Shown: positions 20,501 through 48,260, counted from the first letter of the stretch. The stretch is 64,000 nucleotides of DNA from Hemiscyllium ocellatum (GCF_020745735.1 NC_083419.1:28542085-28606084), one strand, 5' to 3'. Translations and numbers: made by a program. Notes: generated by a model from the letters alone, not told the origin.

Positions 20501-23500
20501 GTGTGTTCTCTATTTCTGTGTTTTTAATGATTACAAAGGTGTCGTCCACGTATCTGACCCATAGTTTGGGTTGTATTTGCGTTAAAACTGTTTTTTCTAA
20601 CCTTTGCACTACTGCTCCTGCTATGGGTCTGGAGATCGGTGAGCCCATGGGTGTTCCGTTGATTTGTTCATATATCTGGTTGTTGAATGAACATAGAACA
20701 TAGAACAATACAGCACAGAACAGGCCCTCGGCCCACGATGTTGTGCCAAACATCTATCCTAGATTAAGCACCCATCCATGTACCTATCCAATTGCCACTT
20801 AAAGGTCGTCAATGATTCTGACTCTACCACTGCCACGGGCAGCGCATTCCATGCCCCCACCACTCTCTGGATAAAGAACCCACCCCTGACATCTCCCCTA
20901 TACCTTCCACCCTTCACCTTAAATTTATGTCCCCTTGTAATACTCTGTTGTACCCGGGGAAAAAGTTTCTGACTGTACTCTATCTATTCCTCTGATCATC
21001 TTATAAACCTCTACCAAGTCACCCCTCATCCTTCGCTGTTCCAACGAGAAAAGGCCGAGAACTCTCAACCTGTCCTCGTACGACCTATTCTCCATTCCAG
21101 GCAACATCCTGGTAAATCTTCTCTGCACCCTCTCCAAAGCTTCCACATCTTTCCTAAAGTGAGGCGACCAGAACTGCACACAGTACTCCAAATGTGGCCT
21201 AACCAAAGTCCTGTACAGCTGCAACATCACTTCACGACTCTTGAATTCAATCCCTCTGCTAATGAACGCTAATACACCATAGGCCTTCTTACAAGCTCTA
21301 TCCACCTGAGTGGCAACTTTCAAAGATCTATGTACATAGACCCCAAGATCCCTCTGTTCCTCCACCTGACTAAGAACTCTACCGTTAACCCTGTATTCCG
21401 CATTCTTATTTGTTCTTCCAAAATGGACAACCTCACACTTAACAGGGTTGAACTCCATCTGAATGTGAAGTGTGTTGTGAGGCACAGGTCCAGTAGTTTA
21501 AGTATGCCGTCTTTGTAAATAGGTTCAACGTCCTGTTGTCTATTATGTATGTCCAGCAGTTGGATATTGTTTCTCTGGCTAGGGTTTTGTCAATAGAGGT
21601 GAACAGTGCTGTTACATCGAATGAGACCATGGTTTCTTCCTTGTCTATGTGTACATTTCTGATGATGTCTGAAGACAGCTAACAACCTGCATCCATGAAC
21701 ACCAACTAGCCACAAAACGACACGACCAGCTATCCTTAGTAGCCATACACTCAGATGACAAACAACATGAATTCGATTGGGAAGACACCACTATTATAGG
21801 GTAAGCCAAACAGAGAACAGCCAGGGAATTCCTAGAGGCATGGCACTCATCCACAAATTCTATCAACAGACACATCGACCTAGACCCTATATACAGGCCA
21901 CTGCAGCGGACAGTAACTGACAACCGGAAGCAGCAGATTCAAACCACTATAAATGCCGGAGGAATCAGCACAGAAGCGCTGCACAGGAGGCTCCCAAGCA
22001 CTGAGGATGTCACCTAGAAAGGGGACGAAACGTTTGCAACAAAAACTCCCAGCTCGGCGAACAGAACCACAACAACGGTGCAGAAAGCAGCTACGAAAGA
22101 AAGTTTCTATTGAGCAGACAATTCATTTAAAGCACCACTTGTGCCAGCTAAGTTTTATTTCTGTAAAAGTTTAAATTTAAAGTGAAATGGGGACTATTCA
22201 CACTTTGAGATTTATCCAAAATCCCACAGATAAACTTTTTATTCACCCCTCAAGTACATGTAGAAAACATAGAAAATTACAGGTCTACACTAGATCAGCA
22301 GTACAGTTACAACACAGTACAGAGAAGATAGAACGTACAACAATACAGCACAGTACAGGCCCTTCAGCCCTTAATATTGTCCCAATCTTATATCCTATTC
22401 TAAAGATTAAACTAACCAACATACCCTTCATTGTACTAATTTCCATGTGCTTATCCAAGAGCAGTTAACAATTATTATAAATAGTTCTAACATGGGGAAA
22501 TAAAGACAAAATTTAAGGACTGCTCATTACCTATACATTTGAAAGGGGTCAAAATGAGTATTGACTATATAAAAGGCTGTGATAAAATTTCATTTGTAAG
22601 TTTTGGGACTCATTTTAATACACATTCCCAAATAACCCCTTCTCCAGTTAATACATCAATACCTTTCAATAACTGTTTCCACTTCTGCATTTCTCTCAAC
22701 CTCAACTTCCTTCTCAGCTTCATCATTTTGGCTTTGGTTGCCTTCTGGTAGTTCTGGTGCACATGGCTTCTCTTCCTCATCATTCCATGCCAATTTCCTG
22801 CTGACTGGAAGGGTAGGAACATCTAACATACTATTGTCTCCTATACCATTATATTTTGCTCTGGCTTTCTCTGGTGATGCTTGTGCTGCAGAATCAGACT
22901 GCAGTTCTTGTTTTGTTATGCTGGAAGTATTTGGTATTTCTGTTGTTCTAAAAATATTAAACAAATATCCTCTAAGCCAGCAATATTGAGATATGTGTAC
23001 ATCATTTAACTGGAAAGACTTACAGCAATATTTACATGTGATTCATGAAATGTATTAGATTCAACAAAGCCACTAATTGTATAAATAAGAGCATTTAACA
23101 TTAGACAATTTTGAAAATTATTCAAAATTACATATGCAAACTCTTAGTGCTGCAGAAGAAAGCATTGTGGGGCTCTAAATATGATGGATAAATTTTAATC
23201 CACACTTGCTATTGTAAGTGAAAATATGACTGCTGCCAAAGGGTTTCGACTACTTCCTGCTGCGACAGCATATGTTAAAAATAAGTTCCAAAATATGTAC
23301 TAATCTACTGATTCATACTTGCAATTATTTTATACACACAATCAAATACAGAAACTGCTCGAAAGGCTCACCGGGCTGGCAGCATCCATTAAGAAATCAG
23401 AGCTAACGTTTTGGGTGGAGCGACCCTTCCTCAGAAGGTTCTGCTGAGTTTTTCCAGCGGTTTCTGTTTTTGTTTGATTTCCACCATCCACAGTTCTTTT

Positions 23501-26500
23501 GGTTCAATTAGTTTATGCATGTTTATTTGTTATTAATCTATACCTTGCAAGGTCCAGAGTTTCGACATTGTCACTGACTGTTTCTTCAGTATCAGATGAG
23601 GAGGAGACCTCCCACAACCTATTTTGTTCTGACAAAATTTGGGTGAGATGATCCCTGGAGAAGTGAGTGCCCAGTGCTCTCCTTTTATATGCTTCTGCTT
23701 TTTCTCTAAGTTCTTTCACCTGTGACAGCAGAGCAGAAGGATAAAAATAAACCTACAGCAGCTTTGATCAGTCTTTCCATAAAATTGTTCAATTCCTGTT
23801 ATGGTCAACATTGTGTAATTTGAAAAGCTAGTTAAAGATAAGAGATCTTTCTGCTCTAAATATATAAAACAGTTGCTGTTCTTACATCTTCAAAACTGCA
23901 AACAATGGTAAAGAACAACACTAGCATAGTAAAGTAGTTGCTAATTATAACTACTTAAAGAAAAAGTTCACTTTGCTAAGTATGCATTTATTAAAACCAG
24001 AACATGCATGGAAAGTACAATCTAAAAACTAACCTCAGCATACCAATAAGAATTTAGGTTATTTTCAGTACCCTACAGAGAAAGAAGGTAGAAATAATTT
24101 GTAAATAGTTTGCTTTTGAAAATCTAATAGCATTAAATGTATTCTAAATTGAAATTAGTGAAACATCAATAATTTGCTGCAAGCATTGGCTGAGGAATTG
24201 TATCATGGTACAAAAGCGCCCCCTGGAGTGTCCTATAAAAATGTTTTAAAAATATAACTGGATGAATATACAAATCTTCAAAAGAAGATCATTTCAATTA
24301 CCACAGATATCATTGAGGTATTGGATTCAGTTAGGCTACTTTCAAATTAACTATCCTGTTTAAAGGGGTCCCAATAAACTTTAGGAGTGTTAAAAGCAAG
24401 TATTGGCATTAGTTCGGTGATCCATTATTCACCTACCCCTTCAGATCGGTATGCTCCTCTACTGTAGTCATATTGACAAGGAGGCCTAAACTTAGTCTTG
24501 TATTCAGACTTAATTTTTCTGGAAAAAAGAAGATGCAAATTGTAACTTTTGCAAATGTGAATGTGGCAAATCATACCTCATAATTAAATTGCACATTTTA
24601 AGCATACAAAGATTGTACCTAAGCCCTTTGCGTGAGCAGATGGGTTTATGCGGATTCTGGTGCTTTAGAAGCTGTTTATCTTGAGGTTGTTGTTCCTTAG
24701 TCTCCTGTCCCTGGTCTTTTGAGGTGGATTCTGTTGACTTAGGATGAACAGTCTTCAGCTTATTATATTGAATAAATTAAAACTCAAAACCCCCTCCCAG
24801 CATGCAACAATGAATGTAACACAATGAATGTAACAATGAATGCATTTTTCACAAGTTCTCGCCAAAGAAAAATTATACTCCTTTAATTATGATACTGCTT
24901 TCATTATTGTATAAAATGATTATTTTATACAATAAAATGGAAAAAAAAACAAAAATTGAATCTTTAAGAATAAAAATAAGAATAGAAAGAAACAATATTT
25001 AAGGTAATTTTCAATTATATTTGATATATTTCTGACATCATTTTGAAAACAGGTACAAAGATTAGATACTTCAGGTGACTATTTAATCTGGCCTGAACTG
25101 TGCACTGATGAACAACATGCTAGAGCAGGGAGTGTAATACCTTGTGATAACGTGAACTCATGACCTGTTAAGAGAATTGATATCCTTGCAGAATCATCTA
25201 AAACCATCTACAGAAATCTGAAAGCCGATTCCTTGTCAACCTTTTCTGCTGAAGACGGTTGACAAAAAGCATCAACAAGAGGGTGAGACATTTTGATACA
25301 TGTTCAGCAGGTCGCAACTAAACTACCGTTTTTCCTTGACCATAAACAGAAAAACTGAGCAAACAACATCCAATTACCTTTACTGGAGACAGATTTTCTT
25401 GCTCAAATGCTAAAGCTTCTTTTCCTTCAAAGTCTTTACGGAAACGCAATCCTTTAGGTGGCTGCATACCTTTAAACTGACTTGAATATTCAGTTTCACT
25501 GAGCATCTTACTGAATTTAAATGGATGCACATGCTTATTTCTGGAGTGAAAAATCTAGAGAAAGGGACAATATTTCTTAATGTTATGAATAATAAAGATG
25601 ATACCCTTTAAAGGAAACTTCCTACTGCAATCCCTCCTTGTTGTATGATATAGACCATACTAACTTGAACAAGGAGCTAGAGACAGAAATATTAACAAAG
25701 TATTAATTTTGATCATCTAATATGAATTAAGGAGAGACGGTGGCATAGTGGTAATGTAATTGGACTAGTAATCCTGAACCCCAGACAGAAGCTCTAAGCA
25801 CATGAGTTCAATTCTCACCAAGGCAGATGGTGAAATTCTGGAATAAAGTGCAGTGGTGACCACGTGACCACTCAATCGTTGTTAAAACCATCTGGATCAC
25901 TAACATCCTTTAGAAAAGGAAATCTGGCATCCTTATCCAGGTGGGCCTACATGCAATCAGTTGACTCTTATCTACCCTCTGGGCAATTAATACTGGCCCA
26001 GCCTCTCATTCTATAAATGAATACAAAATAAAATAGCAGGTTAATAAACTCAATGTCTTTTGTTTACACAGATATATTTATTGGAATTACAATTTGAAAA
26101 TAATATTTTCTAAACTATCCCCCATTCTCACTACAGGTACTGCTGCAATAACATCGTCGTTGCGTCCCAGCGGAACCTCGCTTAACAGAAAATCACTTAA
26201 TAAAAATAATGGGGCCTATGGGAAAAGTGAGGTTAGGGGCAGACCAGCAAAAACAAAAATCACAATTGATTGATTGATCAAAAATCACCAAAAGACTAAT
26301 GCAAAGAATAGCACAGCCTGAATGAAGGTTAAAATCACATTTTTTTAACATAACAAAACAAAAGCAAATTTAACACAACACATTTAAAAAATGTAAGAAA
26401 GCTGCTCTCTGTACAGTACCTCTTACAGAAAGTTGCTCTGTCGGCAGCTGACATTAGCGCATGCACAGAACAGCACACAGACTTCGGCGCATGTGCAAAA

Positions 26501-29500
26501 CGACACAAAGCCCGGTGTCGACAGCACATATGTGCAGACACACATGCATGCATAGCACGGCAAGAACACTGCCGCATGCACAGAACGGCATTAAGATTTT
26601 GGGACACACATTGGCACATGCTGGAATCATGATATTGCCATTTTAGAAAATGATGGAACCATCCAGACATTCAGTTCTCAAAGGTCAATCCTTAGTACCT
26701 GGTTCGCATTTAAAGCCCTCCTCTAACATATGCTTAAAATCTAACTCTTTGACCAAGCATTTGCCACTTCCAGCCCTTCAACTGGCTCAGTTTTTTTTAA
26801 AAACTAATTGCATTCCTGTGTATCTGGGGATGATTTCTTATTATATAATTAATGGTAGGCCTTGGGTAGCATTGTAGAACAGAGGGACCTAACTTCACAT
26901 CCAGCCTTATTAAGAATTCCTATTTTCTTAAATCAAATAAGCAAAGATAAACGTACATAAAAATGATGAAACACATAAAAGAACACAGGAGCGAGAAGGG
27001 GACATACAACCCATCAAGTCTTTTTCATCATTGCTATGAACATGGTTGATCTTGGGCCTCAACTCCATTTTCCTACCCACTCCTCACAACCCTTAGTTCC
27101 AAATTCTCAACCAGCCCTAAATATACTCAATGATGGCACATCCACAACACTTTGGGGTAGTAAATCCCAGAGATTTGCAAACCTCCGAGTGAAGAATTTC
27201 TCCATACCGATCCTAAATGATCAGATGCTTGTCATCAAACCATGCTCCCTTGTTCTAGATTTCTCAGCGTCAGGAAAATTTGTCTTAATACTCACAATGT
27301 TAAGCCCTTAATAATTTTGAATGTTTCAATGAGATCACTTCTCATTATTCTAACTGTCAGGGAATATAGACCCATAATTCAGCACAGGACAACCAACTCA
27401 TCCCATAAGGCCATACGACGTAGGAGCAGAATTTAATCCATTCAGCCCACTGAATCAGCTCCCCCATTTGATCATGGCTGATATGTCTGTCAATCCCATT
27501 CTCCAGCCTTTTCCCTGTAACCTTTGAACGCCTTATTAATCAAGAACCTATCTATCTGTGTCTTAAATACACCCAATGACTTGGCCTCCACAGCCTTCTG
27601 TGAAACTGAGTTCCGCAGATTCATCACATTCCCAGAAATCAATCTAGTCAATCTTTGCAGTACTGCCTCTTATGCAAGTCCTCCTCCTAGGCATTCACAT
27701 GGATAGTGGATGATTTTCTTCTGCTCCTTTGTTGTGGGTCCTATGATGACTAAATAGTCCAATGCTGGATATGTATCCCTTGCGTCAGATGTTGCTCGAA
27801 GACGTAGGAGTGTGATGCTCAGATTTTTGTATGCATCTTCCAGTGTTTGTATTGATTTCCATCTGGACATTGCATCTTTTCTCCAATTTGGGCAGTCTTG
27901 AATTGTGGTCTCATCAAAGCCCTGTACAATTGTAGCAAGCCTTCTTTATTCTTGTAATCCAATCCTTTTGTAATAAAAGACAAAAATAGAAATTGCTGGA
28001 AAAGCTCAGCAGGTCTGGCAGCATCAGCAGAGAGAAATCGGAGTCAACGTTTTGGGTTTTGGGTCAAGTGACCCTTCTTCACAACGTTAACTCTGATTTC
28101 TCTCCACAAATGCTGCCAGACCTGCTGAGCTTTTCTAGCAATTTCTATTTTTGTCTCTGATTTACAGCATCTGCAGTTCTTTCCGTTTCTTTTGTAATAA
28201 AAGCCAATATGCATTTTACTCCCTTATTGCTTGCTGTACCAACATGCGAACTTTCCGTGCTTGTTGTACAAGTATACCTCTGAAAACCAACATTTAAAGT
28301 TCCATTCGTTCAAAAAGTGTTTTCTATTCTTACAAAAATCAGTAACCTCACAATTACCCATACCAAACTCAGTTCAGACATTGTTACCGACTCATCCATA
28401 TATGTATCTTTCTTTACAGGCAATGTATACCCCTCAGTGCTTGCATTCCCTGCTAGCTTTGAATCAACAAGTGTAGATTTGTTTGACTACCTCTTCACCT
28501 AAGTTATTAACACAATTTATGAATAGCTGAAGCCCCTGCCAAACTCCACTGTTCCAAAGATCAATATCCATACGTTGAATTAGGCAGCAAAAAACTTTCA
28601 GAGATTTACAGATATTTTATTAAATCCATAGTTCAGCAAAAACATCAATTTCCACCTTTTCTTTCTGGAGAAGAAACAAACTTTTATTTTAAAAGAAATA
28701 AATTAACAAATTAAAAAACCTGTCCCCTGGGGTCCCATGACCTTAGACAAAACTCACCACCAAAAGGTAGAAACTGAGGGGGGCTAAATCAAAATATCAA
28801 GGGAAGGGAAAATAATGCATCCCAGTCCCCCCCAAGCACACAGAAAAACCAGCTTCTATTTTATTTTCAGTACCCACCACAAATCACCCCACTAATTAAA
28901 TAATCCAATAACAAATTACATTCTCTGCCCGCCAGGGGCAGTATCGCAATAACAAAGAAAGAAGAGCGGACAAAACAAGGCAGGGGACAAAATCAAATTA
29001 GAGTCAGTGGGGAAAATTGATTCACTGTAGCCACCATGGTGACCTCCTACTCAAAAAGACTTCAAGGTTAGCAGTGGGGACAGTGTGTTGCTCTCAGAGG
29101 ATATGGAGAGAATCCAGATTTTCCTTCAACATTTTAATAATAGGTCTTTGTATTTTCTAATCAATGTTGTTACATATTTGTTTCGAGCAATTGGGACACA
29201 GAACTTGCATTTCTTACACTGACATCAGCCTGTCAACTTGAAAATGCCTCATTTATCCCCAACATCTCAGAAAGTATATAATGTATGAGCAGGTAGGGAA
29301 AGAGTTCAGTTTAGAGTTGCTTGACAAAGACTCAGCTAGCATGACTTTGACTAGATGTGAACTTGCAGTAAACAATGCAGGTGCTGGAGGCAAGGGAGTG
29401 GTTTAACAAGGTGAAGAACGTCTATTGTATCATACCAGATGGCTTATTCTTTATTGTTGATGCTCGCTGATTGTAACGGTCACCCAATCAATGTAGATGT

Positions 29501-32500
29501 CGCCTTATTTGGATGTTGCTCCCTGTAAGTAACGATATAATTCCTTAAGAATCTGCTGCTCGAGAGAAGACAGAGAACTCATGTCCTTGTGTACATGGGC
29601 AATCTCTCTCTCTCCAGGACTCGGAATAAAGGTGAAGAGGAGCCATACTGTGTCTAATGGTTTGCTTCAACTGATACGGAAATGTGACGACAAGATTGGG
29701 GTGCCAGGTAGGAGTCCAAACGAATAGTTACAATCAGATTGTATCCAGTGATTGCCCAGAACATCAGGATCTCAAGACGGACAGGCCCACAAGGTAAACC
29801 TCAGTCCCTCTCGATATTCCTTTGTGTTGGATACTGTCTCCTCATTCAATCACTTTATATTCTACGGACTCCTCGAATGGTAATTAGTTCAGTCGAGAGA
29901 CACAGTTTCGTAAACGCACTGACAAATAGGGGTTCTGGTCCCCTGGGCTTAATAAGGGTTCGAGTTCCTGGACATATAGAGTAAGAAAAGGGGTTTCAGT
30001 CACCATGAGAAGTAAAGTGAGAAAGGGGTTCGAGTCCCCAAGGTAGAAAGGGATTAAAGTCTCTGAGGTAAAAGGGGGTTAAAGTCCTCTAATGGTGAGG
30101 TTTGACGCTCTGAAAAAAAAATTTAGAAATCAGGAACTTCAAAGAAAAACTTCTAAACAAAATTTGGTACTCCTTAAAGTTATTGCCTCTATCCCCCGCA
30201 CTCCCCTTAGAAGTACCTTTAGGACAACATGGGAAAAGGAAAAACAAAAGTGGAACCCGTCTGCTCGGATCCCGACACTGAAGTGCATTGACTGCCAGGG
30301 AAGCTTTGTCCGGGTTTTTATTGTGGGAGTCTCAGTTTCTGGGCTGTGGACTTGACTTGGCGAGTCTTTTTTCTGGGGAAGGGGAGTGGCTTGTACTGCA
30401 GCGCCATGTGGTCCACTGCGAATGTTTTATTTTTTAAGTGTAATTTCATCAAGAGGATGCGAGAAAAAAAAATTAGATATGCTGAAATTATGGTTGCACT
30501 AATACTTGGATTGAAAAATGAAGTTTCAATATAAATTATGCCATACTGAAAGTGTTTGATATTTAAATATTTTGGTTTGTTAAAATATTGGTTCAGAAAA
30601 TCCTTTTAAGTAACTGTCTTGCTTTATTTGAATTAGGATCTCAATTCAATGTGTTTTGTGGACGATGTAATAGGGCAGATTTTGTTTTTATATTATTATA
30701 CAACATTATGTCTTTTTAAAAATTATCAAACTTGTAACTTTAAAACAAACTGATCGAGGACCTTGAGCCCTGATTTGTTTGAAAACCTACAATGCCTGTT
30801 TCAAAAAACTAGTGTGTCACTGGTCATGCTTTAGCCAGATGAGAGTATTGTATTAAGATGTTTCTGCTGTTTTTTAATGTAGACTTTTCACAAAGAGTGC
30901 ATTTTAATTTTGATGTTTTGTTAAGATTTTAGAGGATATTAGAACTCAAGGCTGAGCTGTTTAAGTTCTGTCAATTATTCTTAAGACTTCATTGCCCCCC
31001 TTCATATTGCAAATTCAAAGAATGTTAATTCCTACCAAAGTTGCCACTTTAATTCTGACTATTTTATTTGTGAAGTTTCATTTGGAGAACATATTTTAAT
31101 ATATTCTGCATTTGTTTTCAATGAATATTTGAGATTTAAATCTGAACTGAAACTGCACTTCAATGGCTAACGCACAGGAGACATTTTGTTATTTTCTTGC
31201 TGTTCTAGTTTTTGAAATACTTTTCCTGACAGCTTTCACGTTAGCCAAGTATTAATTTGTCAAAGGAAAATAATCTTTGAATAAGCTGAATGAGGTCCCC
31301 CGCGGGTTTGATTTTAGGACCATTGATTATTGTTTATTAAGTGACTGAATTGTTTCAGCAGTACAATTTAGAAGCTTATGGACTGTACAAAACTTGATAA
31401 TGTCATAAATAGTGAACAGATTTCAAGACAACTGAAAATGTTGAAGTAGGCAGGCACAATTTAATGTGGTTAAATGTGTGGCTGTCTTCATACTAATAAC
31501 CACCTTGGCAAGGAAGGAACGAGGGGAAATGCAAAGATACTTTCAGCAGCTAACATCGTCTCTGGAGTTTCTCCATCCACAGGTAAGGCGCGCCTTCGGA
31601 CCACCACCCAACCCTCTACAACCTGATTCAACAGATTTAATGGTAAGGTCCTAGGGAGTGTTGCTAAACAAAGATCTTGGAGTGCAGGTTCATAGCTCCT
31701 TGAAAGTGGAGTCGCAGGTAGATAGGACAGTGAAGGAGGAGTTTGGTATGCTTTCCTTTATTGGGCAGAGTATCGAGTACAGGAGTTGGGAGGTCATGTT
31801 GCGGCTGTACAGGATAGTGGTTAGGCCACTGTTTGAATATTGCATGCAATTCTGGTCTCCTTCCTGTCGGACAGATGTTGTGAAACTTAAAGGGTTCAGA
31901 AAAGATTTAAAAGGATGTGGCCAGGGTTGGAGGATCTGAGCTACAGGGAGAGGCTGAACAGGCTGGGGCTGTTTTCCGTGGAGCATCGGAGGCTGAGGGG
32001 TGACCTTATAGAGGTTTACAAAATTATGAGGGGCATTGATGGGATAAATAGACAAAGTCTTTTCCCTGGGGTCAGGGAGTCCAGAACCAGAGGGCATAGG
32101 TTTAGGGTGAGAGGGGAAAGATATAAAAGGGACCTAAGGGGCAATGTTTTCACGAAGAGAGTGATAAGTATATGGAATGAGCTGTTAAAGGATGTGGTGG
32201 AGGCTGGTACAATTGCAACATTTAAGAGGCATTTGGATGGGTAAATGAATAGGAAGGGTTTGTAGGGATATGGGCCAGGTACTGACAGGTGGGACTAGAT
32301 TGGGTTGGGATATCTGGTCGGCATGGACAGATTGGACCGAAGGGTCTGTTTCCATGCTGTACATCTCTATGACTCTATGAATTCCCCAGTCATGAGCACA
32401 AAAAGTGAAGCTAACAACAGTGAAGAGGAGTTCTGTACGCTTTTTGTCAGTGGCCTTCCTATGGACATTAAGCCAAGTGAGCTTTACCTTCTCTTTTGAC

Positions 32501-35500
32501 CATTTAAGGGATATGAAGGTTCACTGATCAAACTGACATCAAAACAGCCAGTTGGCTTTGTTACATTTGACAGCAGAGTGTGAGCAAAAGCAGCAAAGAA
32601 TGCTGCCTTCATCTAGCCTGCAGCTGCACCTGCCGCACTTCATGATCAGATGCGCTGGTATCCCCCATCTGAAGCATCTCGGGAAGGATGACTGTCTTGT
32701 CAATTTTGTTAAGTTTTTAACTGCCCTAATCCAAGAATTCAGATTTCTCCTTGGAGTGATGCAGAAGGACAGACTGGATTTTGTTTCCAGGTTGGACTTC
32801 ACTGAAGGAGATTTTGGATAACTAGCTCATTTCCACTCGACTTGGAGAGGGTGGAGTGATCACTGACGACTGTGGGTTTAAGAATTCTACTGGTGAAGTT
32901 TCTTCCATATGGGAGGATCCTGCAGATTCTATTTGCTGCATGGACTGGTAATTGTTGCTGTTATAATCAGCTAGGAGAAAGTGAGGACTGCAGATGCTGG
33001 AGATCAGAGCTTAAAAAATGTGTTGCTGGAAAAGCGCAACAGGTCAGGCAGCATCAAAGGAACAGGAGAATCAACGTTTCGGGCATAAGCCCTTCTTCAG
33101 GAATGAGGAGGGTGTGCCAAGCAGGCTAAGATAAAAGGTAGGGAGGAGGGGCGCTGGGAATACGATAGGTGGAAGGAGGTTAAGATGAGGGTAATAGGAC
33201 CACAAGAGATTAACGCAGATCTCTCCAGCTTTCTCATTTCCCCTCCCCCCACCTTTTCTCAGTCCCAACCCTCAGACTCAGCACCACCTTCTTGACCTGC
33301 AATCTTCTTCCTGACCTCTCCACCCCCACCCCCTCTCCGGTCTATCACCCTCACCTTGACCTCCTTCCACCTATTGTATTCCCAGCGCCCCTCCCCCAAG
33401 TCCCTCCCCCTTACCTTTTATCTGAGCCTGCTTGGCACACCCTCCTCATTCCTGAAGAAGGGCTTATGCCCGAAATGTCGATTCTCCTGTCCCTTTGATG
33501 CTGCCTGACCTGCTGCACTTTTCCAGCAACACATTTTTAAGTTGTTATAATCATTGCATGTTGTGTGTCAATAACCTGTTTAAGTACTGGCAGTAAGATT
33601 CTTATGAAGAAGGAGGTAGTGTCATCTAGGTGGTTATCATGGAATGACAAAGGAGGGAATGAGAAAGTGTATAAGCAGGTAGGGAAAGAGTTAAGTTTAG
33701 GATTGCTTGACAAAGGCTCAGCTAGCATGACTTTGACTAGATAAGAATTTGCAGTAAACAGTGAGGTGCTGAAAGCAAGGGTAGTGGTTTAAACGAGGTG
33801 AAGAACATCTATTGTGTAATGCTGGGTGGCTTAATCTTTATTGTTGATGCTTGCTGATTGAAACAGTCAGGAGAAAGTGAGGACTGCAGATGCTAGAGAT
33901 CAGAGCTGAAAATGCACAGCAGGTCAGGCAGCATCCAAGGAGCACGAGAATCGAAGTTTCAGGCATGAGCTTCTTCAGGAATGAGGAGAGTGTGCCAAGC
34001 AGGCTAAGATAAAAGGCGGGGAGGAGGGACTTGGGGGAGGGGCATTGGAAATGCGATAGGTGGAAGGAGGTTAAGGTGAGGGTGATAGGCCGGAGTGGGG
34101 GTGGGAGCGGAGAGGTCAAGAAGAAGATTGCAGGTTAGGAAGGTGGTGCTGAGTTCGAGGGTTGGGACTGAGACGAGGTTGGGGGGGGGGGGGGAAAATG
34201 AGGAAACTGGAGAAGTTTGAGTTCATCCCTTGTGGTTGGAGGGTTCCTAGGCGGAAGATGAGGCGCTCTTCCACCAGCCGTCGTGTTGCTATGGTCTGGC
34301 GATGGAGGAGTCCAAGGACCTGCATGTCCTTGGTGGAGTGGAGGGGGGAGTTGAAGTGTCAAGCCATGGGCTGGTTGAGTTGGTTGGTCTGGGTGTCCCA
34401 GAGGTGTTGTCTGAAACGTTCTGCAAGTAGGCGGCCTGTCTCCCCAATATCGAGGAGGCCACATCGGGTGCAGCTGATGCAGTAAATGATGTGTGTGGAG
34501 GTGCAGGTGAATTTGTGACGGATATGGAAGGATCCCTTGAGGGGAAGTAAGGGAGGAGGTGTGGGCACCTCAACTTCTCCACCCATCTCACCCACTCCAA
34601 CCTCTCACCCTTGGAACATGCAGCCCTCCACTCCCTCCATCCCAACCTCACTATCAAACTGGCAGACAAGGGAGGCGCGGTGGTAGTTTGGGGCACCAAT
34701 CTTTACACCGCTGAGCCTAAATGCCAGCTCACGGACACCTCCTCATACTGCCCCCTTGACCATGACCCCACCTTCCACCACCAAACATCATCTCCCAGAC
34801 CATCCATAACCTCATCTCCTCAAGGGATCTCCCATCGGCCGCCTCCAACCTCATAGTCCCACAACCCTGCACCGCCCATTTCTACCTCCTGCCCAAAATC
34901 CACAAACCTGACTGCCCCAGCCGACCCATTGTCTCAGCCTGCTCCTGCCCCACCGAACTCATCTCTGCATACCTCAACAGGTCCTATCCCCCTTAGTCCA
35001 AGAACTCCCCACCTACGTTCGGGACACCACCTCCACCTCCTCCATGATTTTCGCTTCCCCGGTCCCCAACTCCTTATCTTCACCATGGACATCCAGTCCC
35101 TGTACACCTCCATCCCCCATCACGAAGGACTTAAAGCCCTCCGCTTTTTCCTTTCCCGCCGTACAAACCAGTACCCTTCCACGGACACCCTCCTTCGATT
35201 GACTGAACTGGTCCTCACTCTGAACAACTTCTCTTTCCAATCCTCCTACTTCCTCCAAACCAAAAGAGTAGCCTTGGGTACCCGCATGGACCACAGCTAT
35301 GCCTGCCTCTTCATAGGATATATGGAACCGTCCATCTTCCACAGCTACATTAGCACCACCCCTCACCTTTTCCTCCACTACATCAATGACTGTATCGGCA
35401 CTACCTCGTGCTCCCACGAGGAGGTTGAACAGTTCACCCACTTTACTAACGCCTTCCACCCCGACCTCAAATTTACCTGGACCATCTCAGATTCCTCCCT

Positions 35501-38500
35501 TCCCTTCCTAGACCTCTCCATTTCTATCATGGGCGACCGAATCAACACGTACATTTACTATAAACCGACCGACTCCCACAGCTACCTAGACTACACCTCC
35601 TCCCACCCTGCCCCCTGTAAAAACGCCATCCCATATTTCCAATTCCTTCACCGCATCTCCGCCACTTCCCGCTCCTCCACCCTTGAGCCCTGCACCTCAA
35701 TCGTTACCAGGACAGAACCCCACTGGTCCTCGCCTACCACCCCACCAACCTCCATATACATCGTATCATCCGCCGTCATTTCCGCCACCTCCAAACAGAC
35801 CCCACCACCAGGGATATATTTCCCTCCCCTCCCCTATCAGCATTCCAAAAAGACCACTCCCTCCGTGACTCCCTCGTCAGGTCCACACCCCCCACCAACC
35901 CAACCTCCACTCCCGGCACCTTCCCCTGCAACCGCAAGAAATGCAAACCTTGCGCCCACACCTCCCCCCTTACTTCCCTCCAAGGCCCTAAGGGATCCTT
36001 CCATATCCGCCACAAGTTCACCTGCACCTTCACACACATCATTTACTGCCTCCGCTGCACCCGATGTGGCCTCGTCTACATTGGGGAGACAGGCCACCTA
36101 CTTGTGGAATGTTTCAGAGAACACCTCTGGGACACCCGGACCATACAACACAACCACCCCATGGCTCAACACTTCAACTCCCCTCCCACTCCAGCGAGGA
36201 CATGCAGGTCCATGGACTCCTCCATCGCCAGACCATAGCAACACGACGGCTGGTGGAAGAGCGCCTCATCTTCCCTGAGGAACCCTCCAACCACAAGGGA
36301 TGAACTCAGACTTCTCCAGTTTCCTCATTTCCCCTCCCCCCACCTTGTCTCAGTCCCAACCCTCGAACTCAGCACCACCTCCCTATCCTGCAATCTTCTT
36401 CCTGACCTCTCTGCCCCCACCCCCACCCCCACTCCGGCCTATCACCCTCACTTTAATCTCCTTCCACCTATCGCATTTCCAATGTCCCTTCCCCAAGTCC
36501 CTCCTCCCTACCTTTTATCTTAGCCTGCTTGGCACACTTTCCTCATTCCTGAAGAAGGGCTCATGCCCAAAACATTGTTTCAATCCAAGGAGCAGGAGAA
36601 TCAGTCACCCAATCAATGTAAATGTTGTTTTATTTGTATGCTGCTCCCTGTAAGTGATTATATCATTTCTTAAGAATCTGCTGTTTGAGAGAAGGCAGAG
36701 AACTCTCGTCCTTGTGTACATGGGCGATTGCACTCTCTCTCGGGCTCGGAATGAAAGGTGAGGAAGGTAGAGCTATACTGTGTCTGAGCCAGAAGGTACA
36801 GACTGTATATCTGAGTATTTGCTCCGATTGATACTGGAACGGGATGACACATTTACTCCCTGTCCATTAACCAATCCTTTATCCATGCTAACAGATGGCA
36901 TCGTCCACAGTGAACCCTTATTTGTGAGCAAGGTTTGGTGTAGCACTTTATGATTATTTTTGGAAAAGACAAACATAATTGATATATACTAATTATATTT
37001 TTTAAAAATGTCTCAGAATTTTGTCGTAAAGGATTACCATTTTTAAAACCAAGTTGACGTATTCTAATCAAATGAAGCTTTTCTAAGAGAATTGTTAAGA
37101 TTTCTTTAATGTTAGGTTCCAGCACCTATTATGTGACTGATGGAAAGCTAACTGACCTCGAGATCCTCATTTTCCCTCACTCCTTCCTTGTGATAGCAGT
37201 GGTACATTTACTGGCTTCTAGTTGGTTAGGACCATTCCAGAATCTAGGAAACATTGGAAGATGTAGCCACCTTTGCAGCAATTTCTTTTAAAACTCTGGA
37301 ATGCATGCCATCAGGTCCTGGTGATTTGTCAGATTTTAGTCCCTTGAATTCTCTTACTACCTCTCTGCTGATTTTAAATTATTTGATTTCATTACTCTTC
37401 TTATTCCCTGAATTATTCTCTGTTTCAGGTATATAATGCATGTCTTCTACCAAGTAGACTAAAAATATCTTTGTTCAATATACAAAAATTAAACTTGCCA
37501 CAATTTTTGTGACAAGCTCCAATATTTTCTTGCTTAATGTCATGTTCAGTAGTATACCTATTATTACTGGGTCCAGAAAACACTCCCACTAGTGTTTTGC
37601 AACCATTGTTATTGCTAATTTCCACCCATACTGATTCTGTTTCTTGATTTTCTGAGTTAAAATCCTTTTCTCCAAATGCATAATTTTACTTTCAGGGCTG
37701 CCTCTTTTCCATTTTTCCTGCCTTCTCTAAATATTGTATATTTAGAAGATTTATTTTCCATCTTTAATCATCATGGTTTATAGGATGAGCATCTCTAAAC
37801 CACTTTTCTCAATGTGTGTTGCCGTATTCGCATGCAGCAAGATCTGGACAAAATCCATGATGTGGAGGTGCTGGTGTTGGAATGGGGTGGACAAAGTCAG
37901 AAGTCACACAACACCAGGTTTTAGTCCAGATTTATCTGAAATCACAAGATTTCAGAATGCTGCTTCTTTGTCACTTCACCTGAAGTGCTCCAAAAGCTTG
38001 TGATTTCAAATAAGCTCGCTGAACTACAACTTGGTGTCATGTGACTTGTGACCAGACAAAATCCAAGCTCGAGCTGATAAGTGGCAAGTAATATTCACAC
38101 CGTACAAGTGTCAGACAATGACCATCTCCAATGAGAGAGAATATTACCTTATCTTCATGACATTAAACGGCATTACCATTGCTGAATATCCCACTATCAA
38201 TATCCTGGAAGTTACTATTGACCAGAAACTGATCTAGACAGCTACATAAATACTGTGACTATAACAACAAGTCAGAGAGAGTCATTCATCTGTCAACTCC
38301 CCAAAACCTGTCTACCATTAAGTCCACAAATCAGGGTTGTGATTATGAATACAATCCACATGCCTGGATGAGGACAGCTCCAACAATACTCATGAAGCTC
38401 AATACCATTCATCACACAACAACTAACTTGATTAATGCTCCAGCTTAAACATCCATTCACTCCACCACTGATGCACTGTAGCAGCTTTGCATACATTCTA

Positions 38501-41500
38501 CCATCTAGAGGATAAGGAGATGGGACCTGTAAATTTCCTTCACAGCCACACACCAACTACAATTCCACTTCCTCGCTGTCACTAGGTTAACATTTTGAAA
38601 CTCACTGTCAAACACCATGGGAACACTTCCTTCAAGTGTACTGCAGCAGTTTAAAGTGGCAGCTCATTGGCATTTTCTCAAGGACAAGGAGAGACACTAA
38701 ATGTAATCTGCACAGCCCAACACTGTAAACACTCTGTCCTACATCAATATACTTTTCTACTACCTCAACTTTTACTTTTGTTTGTCTTTGGTTTTCCAAA
38801 TCTGTCTTTGATTAAACCCTCTTCCTCACCTGTCAATTTAAACAATATGTACTAGCATATAAACATAAGAGTGTGTTAAGTCCCTTCCTGCCACATCCTA
38901 TTTACTCTTATTCATATTTACATATTGTGCTCAACCTCATTTAAGTTTCCAAACCTCTCCTGATGTGAACCATTTCCCTTCTCCACCCCCTTCCCATACT
39001 TTTTTTACTTAAAGTCCTCGCCACAGTCCCAATTTAATGATTTGCCAGAACACTGATCATAGTGTGGTTCAGATGAAGACTATGCCAATGGTACAGCTTC
39101 CTTTGCTCCTCTCGGTATTGATGTCGGTGCCTAATGAATCAAAACCCATTCTCCCCCACACAATCCTGCAGCTGCCCACATTCAGTTCTCAGATTTTATT
39201 CTCCCCACGCTTAAATAATTACTTGTTGTAATGTACACATTTGCAGTTATTTAACATTTGATAAATTACACATGTTTCTAATGGAGATTATATTATGAGA
39301 ACAATTTAGTTTCCTCAGCAACGTTTGCACTTTCACTTATTACTTCCATACTTGGGTACTTACTAACAAGAATTTTCTGTGAAGCAGAAAACAGAATGAT
39401 AAACTATACCTGCTCTGCAGTCAGCAATGGGGAATTGTCCATCCGGCTTTTCCAAGCAAATTGTCTCTGGTACTCGGAGTTTTTTTTTAAACTCTTCTGT
39501 GGTATAATTTTCAATGGTGCTGTTTCCTTAAATGCATAGCTCATCTACCAATAACAAGCAGAACATCTTTAATCCTAGTGCTGACTTTTCTCATTTTAAA
39601 GCATACTATATGAAAGTTAATTTATAAAAATGGGGAATTCAAGCCACTCACGGAACCTACCAGTACGGAAGATAAAAGTTATTTTTTGTTATGTTATGAT
39701 GGAATTAAATTTTCTTTTTATTTCTGATCTCAAACATTAACAATACTCCTCTTCCAACACTGAATTTTCTTTCATAATTTTTAAGTATACTTTTACACAA
39801 CTTCAACATCAATCTTAAGCGAACATTACTCCCTATTTCCACCCATTTTAGAAGACCAGTCACAGAGGACTTGCATCTATGCAGGGTGTACATGACAGTT
39901 TTCCTTCCGTTGAACTGGAAAGTGTTTCAACAGCTAACAGGGAAAACAAGAAGCATGGCTGGGAGTTAATGCAGTCACAACCAAAAGGGATCCTATATTT
40001 GATCATTTCTAGCAGCAAGCCAAAAATAAACAGCAGTCACCAAGAAATGATTAAGCTATGATTTTCAGCTAGAGTATGGGCAAAAGGAGTATATTTAGCA
40101 AATTAATTGTTGTTAACGCATGAACTATAACTGTCTTGACAAAGCCCTATGCAATGCTGAGGAAATTCCTTCGCTGGGAAATATTATGCAATAAGAAGGT
40201 ACAACAGCAAAATGAAATTGGAGCAGTCATAACATGCCATTACTTGAGAGCTAGTTGAGTGGAAAATGTGGTGAGAGAAAGAATGTGTAAAGGCAGCTAG
40301 TAAATGGAAAGCAACATTCAACGTAACAAAGAAGCAATGGTGATCTTGAGGGGAGATTGACCAGATCAAATCAAGATATTTCATACAGTTATATGCATCC
40401 TATTATTTAAAGGAATTTACCTGATTAAATGGACTGCCTAGCACCAAACGCACATGCGGTGGGCTGAAAAGTTCAACCTCAGTATCTGAGGTATTGCCAC
40501 AAATATTCTAATTCCCAAGGTAATTTATTCACGGTTATCAGAACAGAAATAAATTACGAAATATTATTTTGGTTTTTCTAAAGACTCATTAAATCATTAA
40601 TTGCATAATAAGAGCAAAACAACAATAACAATCAGCAATTAACCTGACTGCTAGGATCATTCAGGATAAATGTAACAGGTGCTAACTGTGCTGTCTATAT
40701 TAATTTCAAAACACAGTTTTATTGTTTTGCAATTGTAAAAAGTATTTTGCAATACCAATACCCATAGCCCCTTAAAATTAGTTTGAGAGTGGGTGAATAT
40801 TAGAGAAGACATTTAACTTTCAGTCGCTTTAGAGCTGCTTGCTAACAGTATGATGATGTATTTTTAAATAATTCATATTGCACTTTGTCACATAAGGAAA
40901 CAAAACAATTGTTACTGAAGATTTAAAATATAATTCTCAGTTCACAGTTACTAACCGATCATAAACTACCATGCTAGCAACTTTGTTGCTCTGTTCGCAT
41001 CAATTGTTCTCTTTACATATTCCAGAAATGACTGTTCTATAGCTATATATTTCTGAGAATAGTAAAATCATTCTGCACAATATCGTCTTTTTCTGCACAA
41101 GCATATGTTTGCATCCAGGGCTAAATATCTTCCAGAGAAATAGGTCAGGTTAAGATTTTTTTGACTTTTGATTTATTGTTGTTACATGGACATAGATACA
41201 GTGAAAACTGTTGTTTTATCTGCTATGCAGGTAGATTGTATCATACAAAGTGCATCAGGGAGCAGAATAGAGTGCAGAATCCAGTATTGCAGTAGAGGAG
41301 AAGATGCTGAGAGAGAAATAAACATTAACATTAAGAGAACCATTCAAAAGTATGATAACAGCAGGGAATAAAATATAATATGTTCTAAATGACTGTTGTA
41401 ATCCACTAACTACTAGTACTATGATTCCTCTATAAAAGATGTGCAATTGCTTAAAAGACTTCGACTTCTTAATAAGGTGTTAAATGTAACAAGGTCCCAC

Positions 41501-46031: not shown

Positions 46032-46250
46032 GTTCCCGGCAATCCGGCCTCTTGACCCCCCAAGAGTTTCTCAGAACCTAGTGGCACCTCCCCCTTACTG
46101 AGATCCCCATGCCGCCACCCCCCCCCCCCCCGTATCCCTCCTGCCTGAGATGCTCAATACCACCAGGCCCCCACCCAGTCCACTAACCCCTCTGTTCCAC
46201 ACCCCACCCCCCGAGACTGAGATGCTTGGTGCCTTGTCCCCAATATCGCC

Positions 46251-48115
46251 GGTACCTCTCCCTCCCCCGCCCCCCTCACTGTCCCCTGTACCTCTCCCTC
46301 CCCCGCCCCCCCCTCACTGTCCCCTGTACCTCTCCCTCCCCCGCCCCCCCCCTCACTGTCCCCTGTACCTCTCCCTCCCCCGCCCCCCCCTCACTGTCCC
46401 CTGTACCTCTCCCTCCCCCGCCCCCCCCTCACTGTCCCCTGTACCTCTCCCTCCCCCGCCCCCCCCTCACTGTCCCCTGTACCTCTCCCTCCCCCGCCCC
46501 CCCCTCACTGTCCCCTGTACCTCTCCCTCCCCCCCCCCCCCTCACTGTCCCCTGTACCTCTCTCTCCCCCTCACTGTCCCCGGTATCTCCCTCCCCCGCC
46601 CCCCCCTCACTGTCCCCTGTACCTCTCTCTCCCCCGCCCCCCCCTCACTGTCCCCTGTACCTCTCTCTCCCCCGCCCCCCCCTCACTGTCCCCGGTACCT
46701 CTCTCTCCCCCGCCCCCCCCTCACTGTCCCCGGTACCTCTCTCTCCCCCGCCCCCCCCTCACTGTCCCCTGTACCTCTCTCTCCCCCGCCCCCCCCCTCA
46801 CTGTCCCCGGTACCTCTCTCTCCCCCGCCCCCCCCTCACTGTCCCCGGTATCTCCCTCCCCCGCCCCCCCTCACTGTCCCCGGTATCTCCCTCCCCCGCT
46901 CTCCCTCACTGTCCCCGGTATCTCCCTCCCCCGCCCCCCCCTCACTGTCCCCGGTACCTCTCTCTCCCCCGCCCCCCCCTCACTGTCCCCGGTACCTCTC
47001 CCTCCCCCGCCGCCCCCCCCTCACTGTCCCCGGTACCTCTCTCTCCCCCGCCCCCCCCTCACTGTCCCCGGTACCTCTCCCTCCCCCGCCCCCCCCCCCT
47101 CACTGTCCCCGGTACCTCTCCCTCCCCCGCCCCCCCCCCCTCACTGTCCCCGGTACCTCTCTCTCCCCCTCACTGTCCCCGGTATCTCCCTCCCCCGCCC
47201 CCCCCTCACTGTCCCCGGTACCTCTCTCTCCCCCTCACTGTCCCCGGTACCTCTCTCTCCCCCTCACTGTCCCCGGTATCTCTCTCCCCCGCCCCCCCCC
47301 TCACTGTCCCCTGTACCTCTCCCTCCCCCGCCCCCCCTCACTGTCCCCTGTACCTCTCCCTCCCCCGCCCCCCCCCCTCACTGTCCCCTGTACCTCTCCC
47401 TCCCCCGCCCCCCCCCTCACTGTCCCCTGTACCTCTCCCCCCCCCGCCCCCCCCCCTCACTGTCCCCTGTACCTCTCCCTCCCCCTCACTGTCCCCGGTA
47501 TCTCCCTCCCCCGCCCCCCCTCACTGTCCCCGGTACCTCTCTCTCCCCCTCACTGTCCCCGGTACCTCTCTCTCCCCCTCACTGTCCCCGGTATCTCCCT
47601 CCCCCGCCCCCCCTCACTGTCCCCTGTACCTCTCCCTCCCCCTCACTGTCCCCGGTATCTCCCTCCCCCGCCCCCCCTCACTGTCCCCGGTACCTCTCTC
47701 TCCCCCTCACTGTCCCCGGTACCTCTCTCTCCCCCTCACTGTCCCCGGTATCTCCCTCCCCCGCCCCCCCCTCACTGTCCCCGGTACCTCTCCCTCCCCC
47801 GCCCCCCCCTCACTGTCCCCGGTACCTCTCTCTCCCCCCTCACTGTCCCCGGTACCTCTCTCTCCCTCACTGTCCCCGGTACCTCTCTCTCCCCCTCACT
47901 GTCCCCGGTATCTCCCTCCCCCGCCCCCCCCCTCACTGTCCCCGATATCTCCCTCCCCCGCCCCCCCCCTCACTGTCCCCGATATCTCCCTCCCCCGCCC
48001 CCCCCTCACTGTCCCCGATATCTCCCTCCCCCGCCCCCCCCCTCACTGTCCCCGATATCTCCCTCCCCCGCCCCCCCTCACTGTCCCCGATATCTCCCTC
48101 ACTGTCCCCGGTAAC
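46251..48115. repeat. C-rich (G-rich on the minus strand) minisatellite, about 50 units of ~27-40 bp
   Basis: Tandem units such as GTACCTCTCCCTCCCCCGCCCCCCCCTCACTGTCCCC(T/G), with variable C runs and short variants. Confidence 0.97.
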
Positions 48116-48260
48116 CCCCCGCTGTCCGTCTCCTGACTCTGTTGCTTTCTCCGTTTCCTTGGCGAATACCGCGTCCTTCGCCACGCGCAGGCGCACTGGA
48201 CACGCGAACCTAATTTTGAACCAATCAGAAAGCAGAGCCTCTCTCTTAAAGGGCCCACCG
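48105..48260 (-). promoter_or_regulatory. Putative MDM1 promoter
   Basis: CpG-rich unique sequence with NRF1-type CGCGCAGGCGCA (48184-48195), CCAAT (48221), CHR-like TTTGAA (48215-48220), and RFX X-box-like GTTTCCTTGGCGAA (48153-48166) and GTCCCCGGTAAC (~48104-48115). Confidence 0.65.

What the first reader, a model, noticed from the sequence alone, without database searches (positions are those of the whole stretch)
29267..36849. Endogenous retrovirus gutted of its genes and loaded with non-viral, host-derived cargo
Seen in the sequence: paired LTRs, a PBS, a PPT, and only stubs of gag (20 codons), integrase (~35 codons) and env (TM helix). Between them sit ~1.2 kb of non-viral-looking sequence, a CR1 3' end and a spliced RBPMS2 copy. 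Established: defective retroviruses keep the cis signals and replace gag/pol/env with transduced cellular RNA, as acutely transforming viruses and VL30-like elements do. Inference: this may be a member of a non-autonomous shark ERV family that captured and spread host mRNAs, a natural gene-transduction vector sitting antisense in an MDM1 intron.
Basis: partly seen in the sequence, partly recalled or inferred. Interest (0 to 1): 0.85.

Follow-up and report, generated by a model that had tools for sequence, protein, structure and literature searches.

The report
Shark LTR element carrying captured RBPMS cDNA
An old, gene-less retrovirus-like insertion in a bamboo/epaulette shark MDM1 intron carries a spliced, shortened copy of the host RBPMS gene, and the same shortened copy sits on at least three other chromosomes, so it was probably copied around the genome as cargo; this is a shark example of a known process, not a new one.

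Summary
The structure is real but messier than described. A 411-bp 5' LTR (29282-29692) pairs with a 3' LTR that a 2.7-kb Penelope-like insertion splits in two. A TGG-starting candidate primer site and a purine tract sit in the expected places. No gag, pol or env homology could be shown, and there is no 4-6 bp target duplication. The RBPMS copy is confirmed and spliced.

New evidence:
- Three short 'RBPMS2-like' proteins of Chiloscyllium plagiosum, on three other chromosomes, share this copy's odd internal deletion.
All these copies therefore descend from one founder cDNA.
- The paralogues read straight through where the CR1 fragment sits, so the CR1 piece is a later hit. The two Penelope-derived pieces have their own target duplications and are also later hits.
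- The whole composite is present at the same site in C. punctatum and absent from that intron in Stegostoma.

Best reading: an LTR-mediated retrocopy that was re-amplified as a non-autonomous element. The LTR context of the paralogues could not be checked because no DNA was available. Verdict: new member of a known kind, moderate interest.

The parts
29269..29281 (+). 13-mer just before the 5' LTR that repeats the end of the purine tract plus the first 7 nt of the LTR (12 of 13 identical). Unexplained aberrant 5' end.
   Evidence: only 2 matches in the window, this one and the real tract/LTR junction at 33662-33674; chance expectation 0.13 per window. Identical in C. punctatum.
29282..29692 (+). 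5' LTR, 411 bp, TG...CA, AATAAA at 29625
29697..29714 (+). Candidate primer-binding site (starts TGG, 4 nt after the LTR)
   Evidence: Read from the sequence. Not verified: no tRNA gene in the window or loci.
29715..30228 (+). Leader-like non-coding stretch with a 25-nt tandem repeat at 30020-30087
   Evidence: single copy
30229..30291 (+). Identity unproven.
   Evidence: no relatives for the overlapping 87-aa ORF
30292..31500 (+). AT-rich block of unknown origin (the 3' bound is approximate)
   Evidence: GC 0.30-0.32; no Pfam hit above noise; no other copy in the window, L001, L002 (other than the ortholog) or L003
31562..31638 (+). In the paralogues it runs straight into the RBPMS start.
   Evidence: tblastn of P0155 and P0171: residues 5/7-28/31 map here and residues 28/31 onward map at 32371 and beyond. 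No Pfam or PDB hit.
31639..32372 (+). 5'-truncated CR1-like LINE fragment, a later insertion private to this locus's lineage (ends uncertain by about 8 nt because of microhomology with the target)
   Evidence: absent from the three paralogous proteins; present in the C. punctatum ortholog
32392..32712 (+). RBPMS-family processed cDNA copy, broken: four premature in-frame stops, no frameshift, and one internal deletion shared by the whole family
32713..32956 (+). Unassigned stretch: RBPMS 3'UTR and/or an env remnant. It ends in the first half of a hydrophobic run.
   Evidence: no A-run, no LINE tail
32970..33540 (+). Nested 571-bp hairpin element made of Penelope-type terminal repeats, flanked by a 13-bp target duplication (32957-32969 and 33541-33553, 12 of 13 identical)
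33554..33648 (+). Second half of the hydrophobic run plus a basic tail (env-like C-terminus, unproven)
33649..33667 (+). Polypurine tract
33668..33869 (+). 3' LTR, part A
33870..36601 (+). Nested Penelope-like retroelement with about 600-nt inverted ends and a degraded reading frame; 6-bp target duplication CAGTCA (33864-33869 and 36602-36607)
   Evidence: GIY-YIG hits are weak (E 0.05 and 0.16). A 75.6%-identical copy at 61.1-63.0 kb has RVT_1 at E 4e-6.
36602..36849 (+). 3' LTR, part B (its first 6 nt are the duplicated target of the nested insertion)
25378..25554 (-). MDM1 exon downstream (in gene sense) of the intron that holds the element
39407..39559 (-). MDM1 exon upstream (in gene sense) of that intron

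Best explanation
This is an old, non-coding LTR retroelement (retrovirus-like, class unproven) lying antisense in an MDM1 intron of a hemiscylliid shark.

Its interior holds a processed RBPMS-family cDNA. The cDNA was most likely picked up during reverse transcription, by template switching between element RNA and a co-packaged host mRNA (LTR-mediated retroposition, or retroviral transduction). This step is inferred.

The founder cDNA suffered one internal jump that removed the second half of the RRM and the linker. The resulting chimera was then copied to several chromosomes, probably as a non-autonomous LTR element served in trans by an unknown helper. The several copies from one founder are shown; copying together with the LTRs is inferred.

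The MDM1 copy was inserted after the lineage split from Stegostoma and before the Hemiscyllium/Chiloscyllium split. It was later hit by a CR1-like LINE just upstream of the RBPMS start codon, by a Penelope-type hairpin element in the env-like tail, and by a Penelope-like element in the 3' LTR (shown). It now evolves neutrally and does nothing obvious.
For: PROVIRUS ANATOMY
- LTR pair, TG..CA ends, AATAAA, purine tract and a TGG site are in the right places.

RBPMS IDENTITY AND SPLICING
- PDB 5cyj matches at E 6.7e-10 and 4.1e-12.
- Genomic ORFs P0209, P0226, P0232 and P0237 lose similarity right after '...LTSKQ', whereas the copy reads on.
- The copy also reads across the last exon join that the teleost short isoforms define.

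ONE FOUNDER, SEVERAL LOCI
- XP_043545055.1, XP_043546817.1 and XP_043563611.1 lie on contigs of 138, 157 and 72 Mb, while MDM1 is on the 70-Mb contig.
- They share the join '..AKNA|AFT..'. This is not an exon boundary: natural exon skipping gives '..AKNALN|MRWYP..'.
- They also share the upstream ~25 codons.
- Identity between copies is 68-76% at protein level. That fits neutral DNA divergence similar to the LTR-LTR distance (inference).

NO LINE HALLMARK ON THE CARGO
- There is no poly(A), no LINE tail and no target duplication around the RBPMS unit.

LATER HITS
- The CR1 fragment is absent from the paralogues and ends at its native 3' end.
- The Penelope-type pieces carry their own target duplications.

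DATING
- The whole composite sits at the orthologous site in C. punctatum at 92-95% identity with identical junctions.
- It is absent from that intron in Stegostoma.
- K2P between orthologs is 0.04-0.06, against Stegostoma 0.16-0.20, and between the LTRs 0.13-0.25.

PRECEDENT
- PMC5131818 describes the same mechanism, including secondary retroposition.
Against: - No DNA of any paralogue could be read, so their LTR context is unknown.
- No gag, pol or env homology was found, so 'retrovirus' rests on cis signals and a hydrophobic run.
- There is no 4-6 bp target duplication, and the 5' end is odd. The two LTRs could come from two proviruses.
- The PBS is unverified.
- The LTR is single-copy in all DNA available here: the 64-kb window plus about 90 kb from three related loci, part of it N-masked and one locus the same insertion.
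- The stretch upstream of the RBPMS start may simply be RBPMS 5'UTR. That would also fit plain retrocopies.
- The origin of the AT-rich block is unknown.
Confidence: 0.6

Rival explanations
1. Chance nesting. The shortened RBPMS cDNA family was spread by some other route (LINE-mediated retroposition of one founder's transcript). One copy happened to land inside an already degraded LTR element, so the LTRs never carried it.
For: - The LTR context of the paralogues is unknown.
- The stretch upstream of the start codon has no viral hit and could be RBPMS 5'UTR.
- This intron has taken many other insertions.
Against: - There is no poly(A), LINE tail or target duplication at the unit's ends.
- The only LINE piece lies 5' of the cDNA and is absent from the paralogues.
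- The unit sits exactly where gag-pol-env are missing, as in described LTR-mediated retrocopies.
- Inner parts of LTR elements are a small target (inference).
Confidence: 0.22
2. Recombinant or rearranged mosaic. The two LTRs belong to two different proviruses, or to an aberrantly joined DNA. Part of the interior, above all the AT-rich block, is ordinary genomic DNA caught between them rather than transduced RNA.
For: - There is no 4-6 bp target duplication in either species.
- A purine-tract-plus-LTR-start 13-mer repeats at the 5' end.
- An 11-mer is shared by both flanks at unequal distances from the LTR ends.
- The block's GC (0.30-0.32) is nearer to the surrounding intron (0.35-0.41) than to the rest of the element.
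Against: - The block has no counterpart in the Stegostoma MDM1 locus or elsewhere in the window.
- Both LTRs are in one orientation, with the primer site and purine tract at the inner edges.
- LTR-LTR distance fits the phylogenetic bracket.
Confidence: 0.12
3. Relic of an acutely transforming-type virus, in which RBPMS acted as a captured growth-promoting gene expressed as a viral fusion protein.
For: Layout: short gag-like start, cellular cDNA, env-like tail, LTRs. The paralogous ORFs begin about 30 codons upstream of the RBPMS start.
Against: - The cargo keeps only half an RRM plus the C-terminal tail.
- The 20-codon ORF is closed 1.2 kb before the cDNA.
- The copies are germline-fixed and diverge at the neutral rate (92.6% against 92-95% for flanks).
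Confidence: 0.03

Closest known systems
LTR-mediated retrocopies (Tan et al. 2016, Genome Res, PMC5131818; for example HERV-K/FAM8A1 in human, IAPEy cases in mouse, and cases in zebrafish and chicken)
   Same: An intronless partial host cDNA replaces the inner ORFs of an LTR element. The cDNA has no poly(A) or target duplication of its own. The chimera behaves as a non-autonomous element with secondary copies.
   Different: The host group is a cartilaginous fish. The element is old and heavily overprinted. There is an extra 1.2-kb block of unknown origin. Microsimilarity at the fusion points could not be examined, and the LTR context of the secondary copies has not been seen.
Transducing (acutely transforming) retroviruses
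   Same: The order is LTR, leader, short gag-like start, spliced cellular cDNA, env-like tail, purine tract, LTR. Replicative genes are lost (established knowledge).
   Different: The copies are germline-fixed and multi-copy. The cargo is a truncated RNA-binding protein rather than a known oncogene. No gag fusion frame is present and no viral protein homology was detected.
VL30 / ETn-type non-autonomous LTR elements of mouse
   Same: The cis signals are kept and there is no coding capacity. The non-viral interior is presumably served in trans (my own knowledge, not tested).
   Different: No helper was identified. The copy number of the LTR itself is unknown. The interior here includes a recognisable host cDNA.
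Maize Bs1 and rice LTR elements with captured gene fragments (cited in PMC5131818)
   Same: LTR retrotransposons that carry host gene pieces and propagate them.
   Different: Plant Ty1/Ty3-type elements, against a vertebrate ERV-like element here.

Membership tests
LTR retroelement / endogenous retrovirus (provirus) | Two direct LTRs with TG...CA ends | tested here: met
   411 bp, 84-87% identity
LTR retroelement / endogenous retrovirus (provirus) | Polypurine tract abutting the 3' LTR | tested here: met
   19 nt, 17 of them purines, at 33649-33667
LTR retroelement / endogenous retrovirus (provirus) | Primer-binding site complementary to a tRNA 3' end next to the 5' LTR | tested here: inconclusive
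   A TGG-starting 18-mer lies 4 nt after the LTR. No tRNA gene in the window or L001/L002 to compare.
LTR retroelement / endogenous retrovirus (provirus) | 4-6 bp target-site duplication | tested here: not met
   The flanks differ, in this species and in C. punctatum. Odd repeats are present instead.
LTR retroelement / endogenous retrovirus (provirus) | Recognisable gag, pol or env sequence | tested here: not met
   No Pfam or PDB hit for any stop-free piece. Only a hydrophobic run before the purine tract.
LTR-mediated retrocopy / transduced host cDNA | Host-derived sequence lacks the parent gene's introns | tested here: met
   At least two exon joins are read through
LTR-mediated retrocopy / transduced host cDNA | cDNA lies between the LTRs in place of the inner ORFs, without its own poly(A) or target duplication | tested here: met
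LTR-mediated retrocopy / transduced host cDNA | Microsimilarity between element and mRNA at both fusion points | not testable with these tools
   Neither the parent RBPMS mRNA of these sharks nor an intact element of the family could be obtained
LTR-mediated retrocopy / transduced host cDNA | Secondary copies with the same junctions, flanked by the same LTRs | tested here: inconclusive
   Three paralogues share the internal join and the upstream junction.
Non-autonomous ERV family with a helper (VL30/ETn-like) | An autonomous element with matching LTR and primer site in the same genome | not testable with these tools
   No nucleotide search of shark genomes is offered. There is no second LTR copy in the window or in L001-L003.
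CR1-type LINE insertion | 5'-truncated copy ending at the family's own 3' end with a short tandem repeat, in a multi-copy family | tested here: met
   The name 'CR1' itself rests on recollection; no named database hit.
Penelope-like element (nested insertion) | Reverse transcriptase plus GIY-YIG nuclease | tested here: inconclusive
   RVT_1 at E 4e-6 (27.0 bits, below Pfam's 29.6-bit cut-off) only in the 75.6%-identical copy at 61.7-62.2 kb. GIY-YIG at E 0.05 and 0.16, below Pfam's cut-off.
Penelope-like element (nested insertion) | Terminal repeats, often with an inverted partial copy, and a short target duplication | tested here: met
   About 600-nt inverted arms at 89% identity, and a CAGTCA duplication
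Penelope-like element (nested insertion) | Hammerhead ribozyme in the terminal repeat | tested here: not met
   No Rfam hammerhead match at E up to 1 in 27500-38500

The most novel reading that the evidence does not exclude
A non-autonomous ERV-like family of hemiscylliid sharks spread a half-RRM RBPMS mini-gene. Some copies, for example the 132-residue open one behind XP_043545055.1, are kept and expressed from LTR promoters as a new small protein that interferes with RBPMS function.
Probability: 0.1. Interest if true: 0.7.

Novelty: new member of a known kind. Interest (0 to 1): 0.45.

Why it matters
[quoted passage not shown] A cartilaginous-fish case with clear secondary amplification would push the process to the base of jawed vertebrates. 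It would also give a dated example: after the Stegostoma split and before the Hemiscyllium/Chiloscyllium split.

It matters for annotation too. Three 'RBPMS2-like' gene models in C. plagiosum are most likely copies of this cargo rather than ordinary paralogues.

Tried and rejected
SEARCHES THAT FOUND NOTHING
- Rfam scan of 27.5-38.5 kb: no hammerhead or other credible RNA family. My idea that the Penelope-type repeats carry a ribozyme is not supported.
- Pfam and PDB on all stop-free pieces of the 'gag', 'integrase' and 'env' stretches: nothing.
- Protein search with the ORF across the gag-like start and AT-block junction: no relatives.
- tRNA scans for a primer match: none.
- Exact LTR words in metagenome and viral collections: none.
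- PDB search to name the LINE family: nothing.
- Short direct repeats around the AT block and the RBPMS unit: only 6-8-mers of no weight.

DNA THAT COULD NOT BE READ
- No DNA could be fetched for the C. plagiosum loci.
- The Rhincodon locus is N-masked over the site; I left it so.
- Stegostoma lacks the element but gives no base-exact empty site.

REJECTED READINGS
- CR1 as cargo.
- The AT block as local MDM1 intron DNA. It has no Stegostoma counterpart, but this test is weak.

SLIPS, REPORTED AS REQUIRED
- None was entered into a tool or used as evidence.
- Two scripts printed stop-free stretches with their bounds, which implicitly shows where stops lie. I repeat none of those places here.


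Full report
WHAT IS THERE

A self-comparison of the region shows one 411-bp repeat. The copy at 29282-29692 matches 33668-33869 (87%, E 1e-60) and 36604-36785 with its continuation to 36849 (84%, E 8e-42).

- The LTR begins with TG and ends with CA, and carries AATAAA at 29625.
- Four bases after the 5' LTR comes an 18-mer starting TGG.
- A 19-nt tract with 17 purines abuts the 3' LTR.
- The element reads on the + strand.
- MDM1 exons lie on the minus strand on both sides (Pfam MDM1, E 5e-21 to 7e-29). The element sits in the intron between exons 39407-39559 and 25378-25554.
- The exons are 98-100% identical to Hemiscyllium ocellatum MDM1, so the window comes from that species or a very close relative.

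THE INTERIOR, LEFT TO RIGHT

- About 530 nt of leader-like sequence with a 25-nt tandem repeat.
- A 20-codon Met-Gly ORF.
- A 1.2-kb AT-rich block (GC 0.30-0.32) with no ORF, no hit and no other copy.
- About 140 nt of GC-normal sequence.
- A LINE 3' fragment.
- The RBPMS-like copy.
- About 245 unassigned nt.
- A 571-bp hairpin insertion.
- A short hydrophobic-then-basic reading frame.
- The purine tract.

No stop-free piece of the supposed gag, integrase or env stubs hits Pfam or any solved structure.

THE RBPMS COPY

Two stop-free pieces match human RBPMS (5cyj/5det, E 6.7e-10 and 4.1e-12) and RBPMS2 (2m9k) over RRM residues 1-58.

Four genomic ORFs from other vertebrates lose RBPMS similarity directly after '...LTSKQ'. 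Isoform P0250 skips from that point to 'GIRFD'. An intron therefore lies there in the parent genes, and the shark copy reads straight on. Teleost short isoforms join '..AKNALN' to 'MRWYP..', which marks the start of the last exon. The shark copy reads across that join as well. It is therefore cDNA-derived.

It is broken by four premature in-frame stops, with no frameshift against P0154 over 111 residues. It also has one internal deletion.

THE DECISIVE NEW RESULT

The C. punctatum ortholog of this copy has a longer open stretch, and I used that stretch as a query. The best three hits in 5.8 billion proteins are short 'RBPMS2-like' models of Chiloscyllium plagiosum:

- XP_043545055.1 (132 aa)
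- XP_043546817.1 (109 aa)
- XP_043563611.1 (126 aa)

They lie on three different chromosome-scale contigs, none of which is the MDM1 contig. They share two private features with the window copy.

1. The same internal join, '..AKNA' running into 'AFT.P..'. This lies two residues before one exon end and inside the penultimate coding stretch, so it is not the product of exon skipping. One event in one founder best explains it.
2. About 25 codons upstream of the RBPMS start ('LEFLH.Q....GP....PQP.P.DS'). In the paralogues they run without a break into the residues that map from 32371 on.

So the stub and the cDNA form one unit that exists at four or more loci. The 734-bp LINE fragment between them in the window is a later insertion. 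That fragment is 5'-truncated. It ends where another copy of its family ends, with an 8-nt repeat that overlaps similar target bases.

Identity between copies (68-76% in protein) is about what neutral DNA divergence of 0.12-0.16 would give. That is close to the LTR-LTR distance (inference).

THE OTHER NESTED PIECES

- The insertion at 33870-36601 has about 600-nt inverted ends (89%) and duplicates CAGTCA of the LTR.
- It is 75.6% identical over 1.1 kb to a copy at 61.1-63.0 kb that hits RVT_1 at E 4e-6 (27.0 bits, just under Pfam's 29.6-bit cut-off). Two of its own pieces hit GIY-YIG weakly (E 0.05 and 0.16). This fits a Penelope-like element, although the nuclease hit is below Pfam's threshold and no hammerhead was found.
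- The insertion at 32970-33540 is a hairpin made of the same terminal repeats, with a 13-bp target duplication.
- Both are therefore independent later insertions.

COMPARATIVE DATING

- The C. punctatum MDM1 locus (L002) holds the whole composite at the same site with identical outer junctions, at 92-95% identity. That includes the LINE piece, the hairpin and the ends of the Penelope-like insert. The interior of that insert is an N gap in L002, which I left alone.
- All segments, the RBPMS copy included (92.6%), diverge like the flanking intron, so there is no sign of constraint.
- In Stegostoma (L001) the intron aligns up to window position 27868 and again from 38113. In between it has 444 unrelated bases where the hemiscylliids have 10.2 kb. 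The element is absent there, but the empty site is not base-exact.
- Rhincodon (L003) is N-masked over the site.
- K2P distances are 0.04-0.06 between orthologs, 0.16-0.20 to Stegostoma, and 0.13 (part A) and 0.19-0.25 (part B) between the LTRs. This places insertion between the two splits.

ODDITIES

- There is no 4-6 bp target duplication in either species.
- Immediately before the 5' LTR lies a 13-mer that repeats the last 6 nt of the purine tract plus the first 7 nt of the LTR. It matches 12 of 13 positions and is the only other match in the window.
- The 11-mer CATTTAYYCCC occurs only twice in the window: once directly after the 3' LTR and once 21 nt before the 5' LTR.
- I read this as an aberrant left end and a non-canonical joining, or a recombinant provirus. 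That is inference.

MECHANISM

The layout matches LTR-mediated retroposition as described by Tan et al. (PMC5131818). There, reverse transcriptase switches from element RNA to a co-packaged mRNA and back. Part of the inner ORFs is replaced, the retrocopy has no poly(A) or target duplication of its own, and the chimera can undergo secondary retroposition.

- Shown here: cDNA origin, position between LTRs, lack of LINE hallmarks, one founder with several loci, later overprinting, and age.
- Inferred: that capture happened in a particle, that the secondary copies moved with these LTRs, and that a helper existed.
- Main rival: the unit spread by another route and landed here by chance. Only the flanks of the paralogues can exclude this, and the tools returned no DNA for them.

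VERDICT

- right for the RBPMS cargo
- wrong for CR1 and the Penelope-type pieces
- unproven for the viral stubs and the AT block

This is a new shark member of a known kind.

SLIPS

Two scripts printed bounds of stop-free stretches. Consensus lines printed by the alignment tools were not used.

Noticed in passing
window 61147-62976 (-): Second, better preserved Penelope-like copy. RVT_1 at E 4e-6 (27.0 bits, just below Pfam's cut-off). 75.6% identical over 1.1 kb to the one nested in the 3' LTR.
   Followed up: partly
window 3684-4093, 5323-5426, 6508-6624, 13214-13436, 27972-28183, 45647-45769, 61027-61155, 63778-63836: Many short hairpin-forming repeats related to the Penelope-type termini. 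No Rfam family, only sub-threshold miRNA-like scores at 28010-28124.
   Followed up: partly
window 46100-48400: About 2.3 kb proline-rich tandem array with stop-free frames of 650-720 codons on the + strand. Probably a minisatellite rather than a gene.
   Followed up: no
window 22-684 (-), 20771-21497 (-), 9997-10174 (+): Further fragments of the same CR1-like LINE family. No Pfam or PDB name could be attached.
   Followed up: partly
window 19783-21700 (-): Another reverse-transcriptase-like retroelement fragment with long stop-free pieces, between MDM1 exons.
   Followed up: no
C. plagiosum XP_043545055.1, XP_043546817.1, XP_043563611.1: These gene models, named RBPMS2-like or rbpms2a-like, look like copies of the element-borne cDNA. 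One lies antisense inside EXOC6 (Sec15 domains) and one antisense inside another gene. Model spans are 2.2, 2.8 and 17.6 kb.
   Followed up: partly
window 27905-29281 and 36850-38112: The 1.3-1.4 kb on either side of the element are also missing from the Stegostoma intron. The element may therefore have entered, or come in with, other lineage-specific DNA. The right flank holds a LINE endonuclease-like ORF on the minus strand.
   Followed up: partly
L002 14658-14939 (-): The C. punctatum ortholog of the RBPMS copy has a 94-codon open stretch, fewer stops than the window copy. Some stops are therefore lineage-specific.
   Followed up: partly
P0172, P0183, P0188, P0190 (teleosts): Natural short RBPMS isoforms of 91-104 aa join the RRM exon directly to the last exon. 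These helped place exon bounds.
   Followed up: yes
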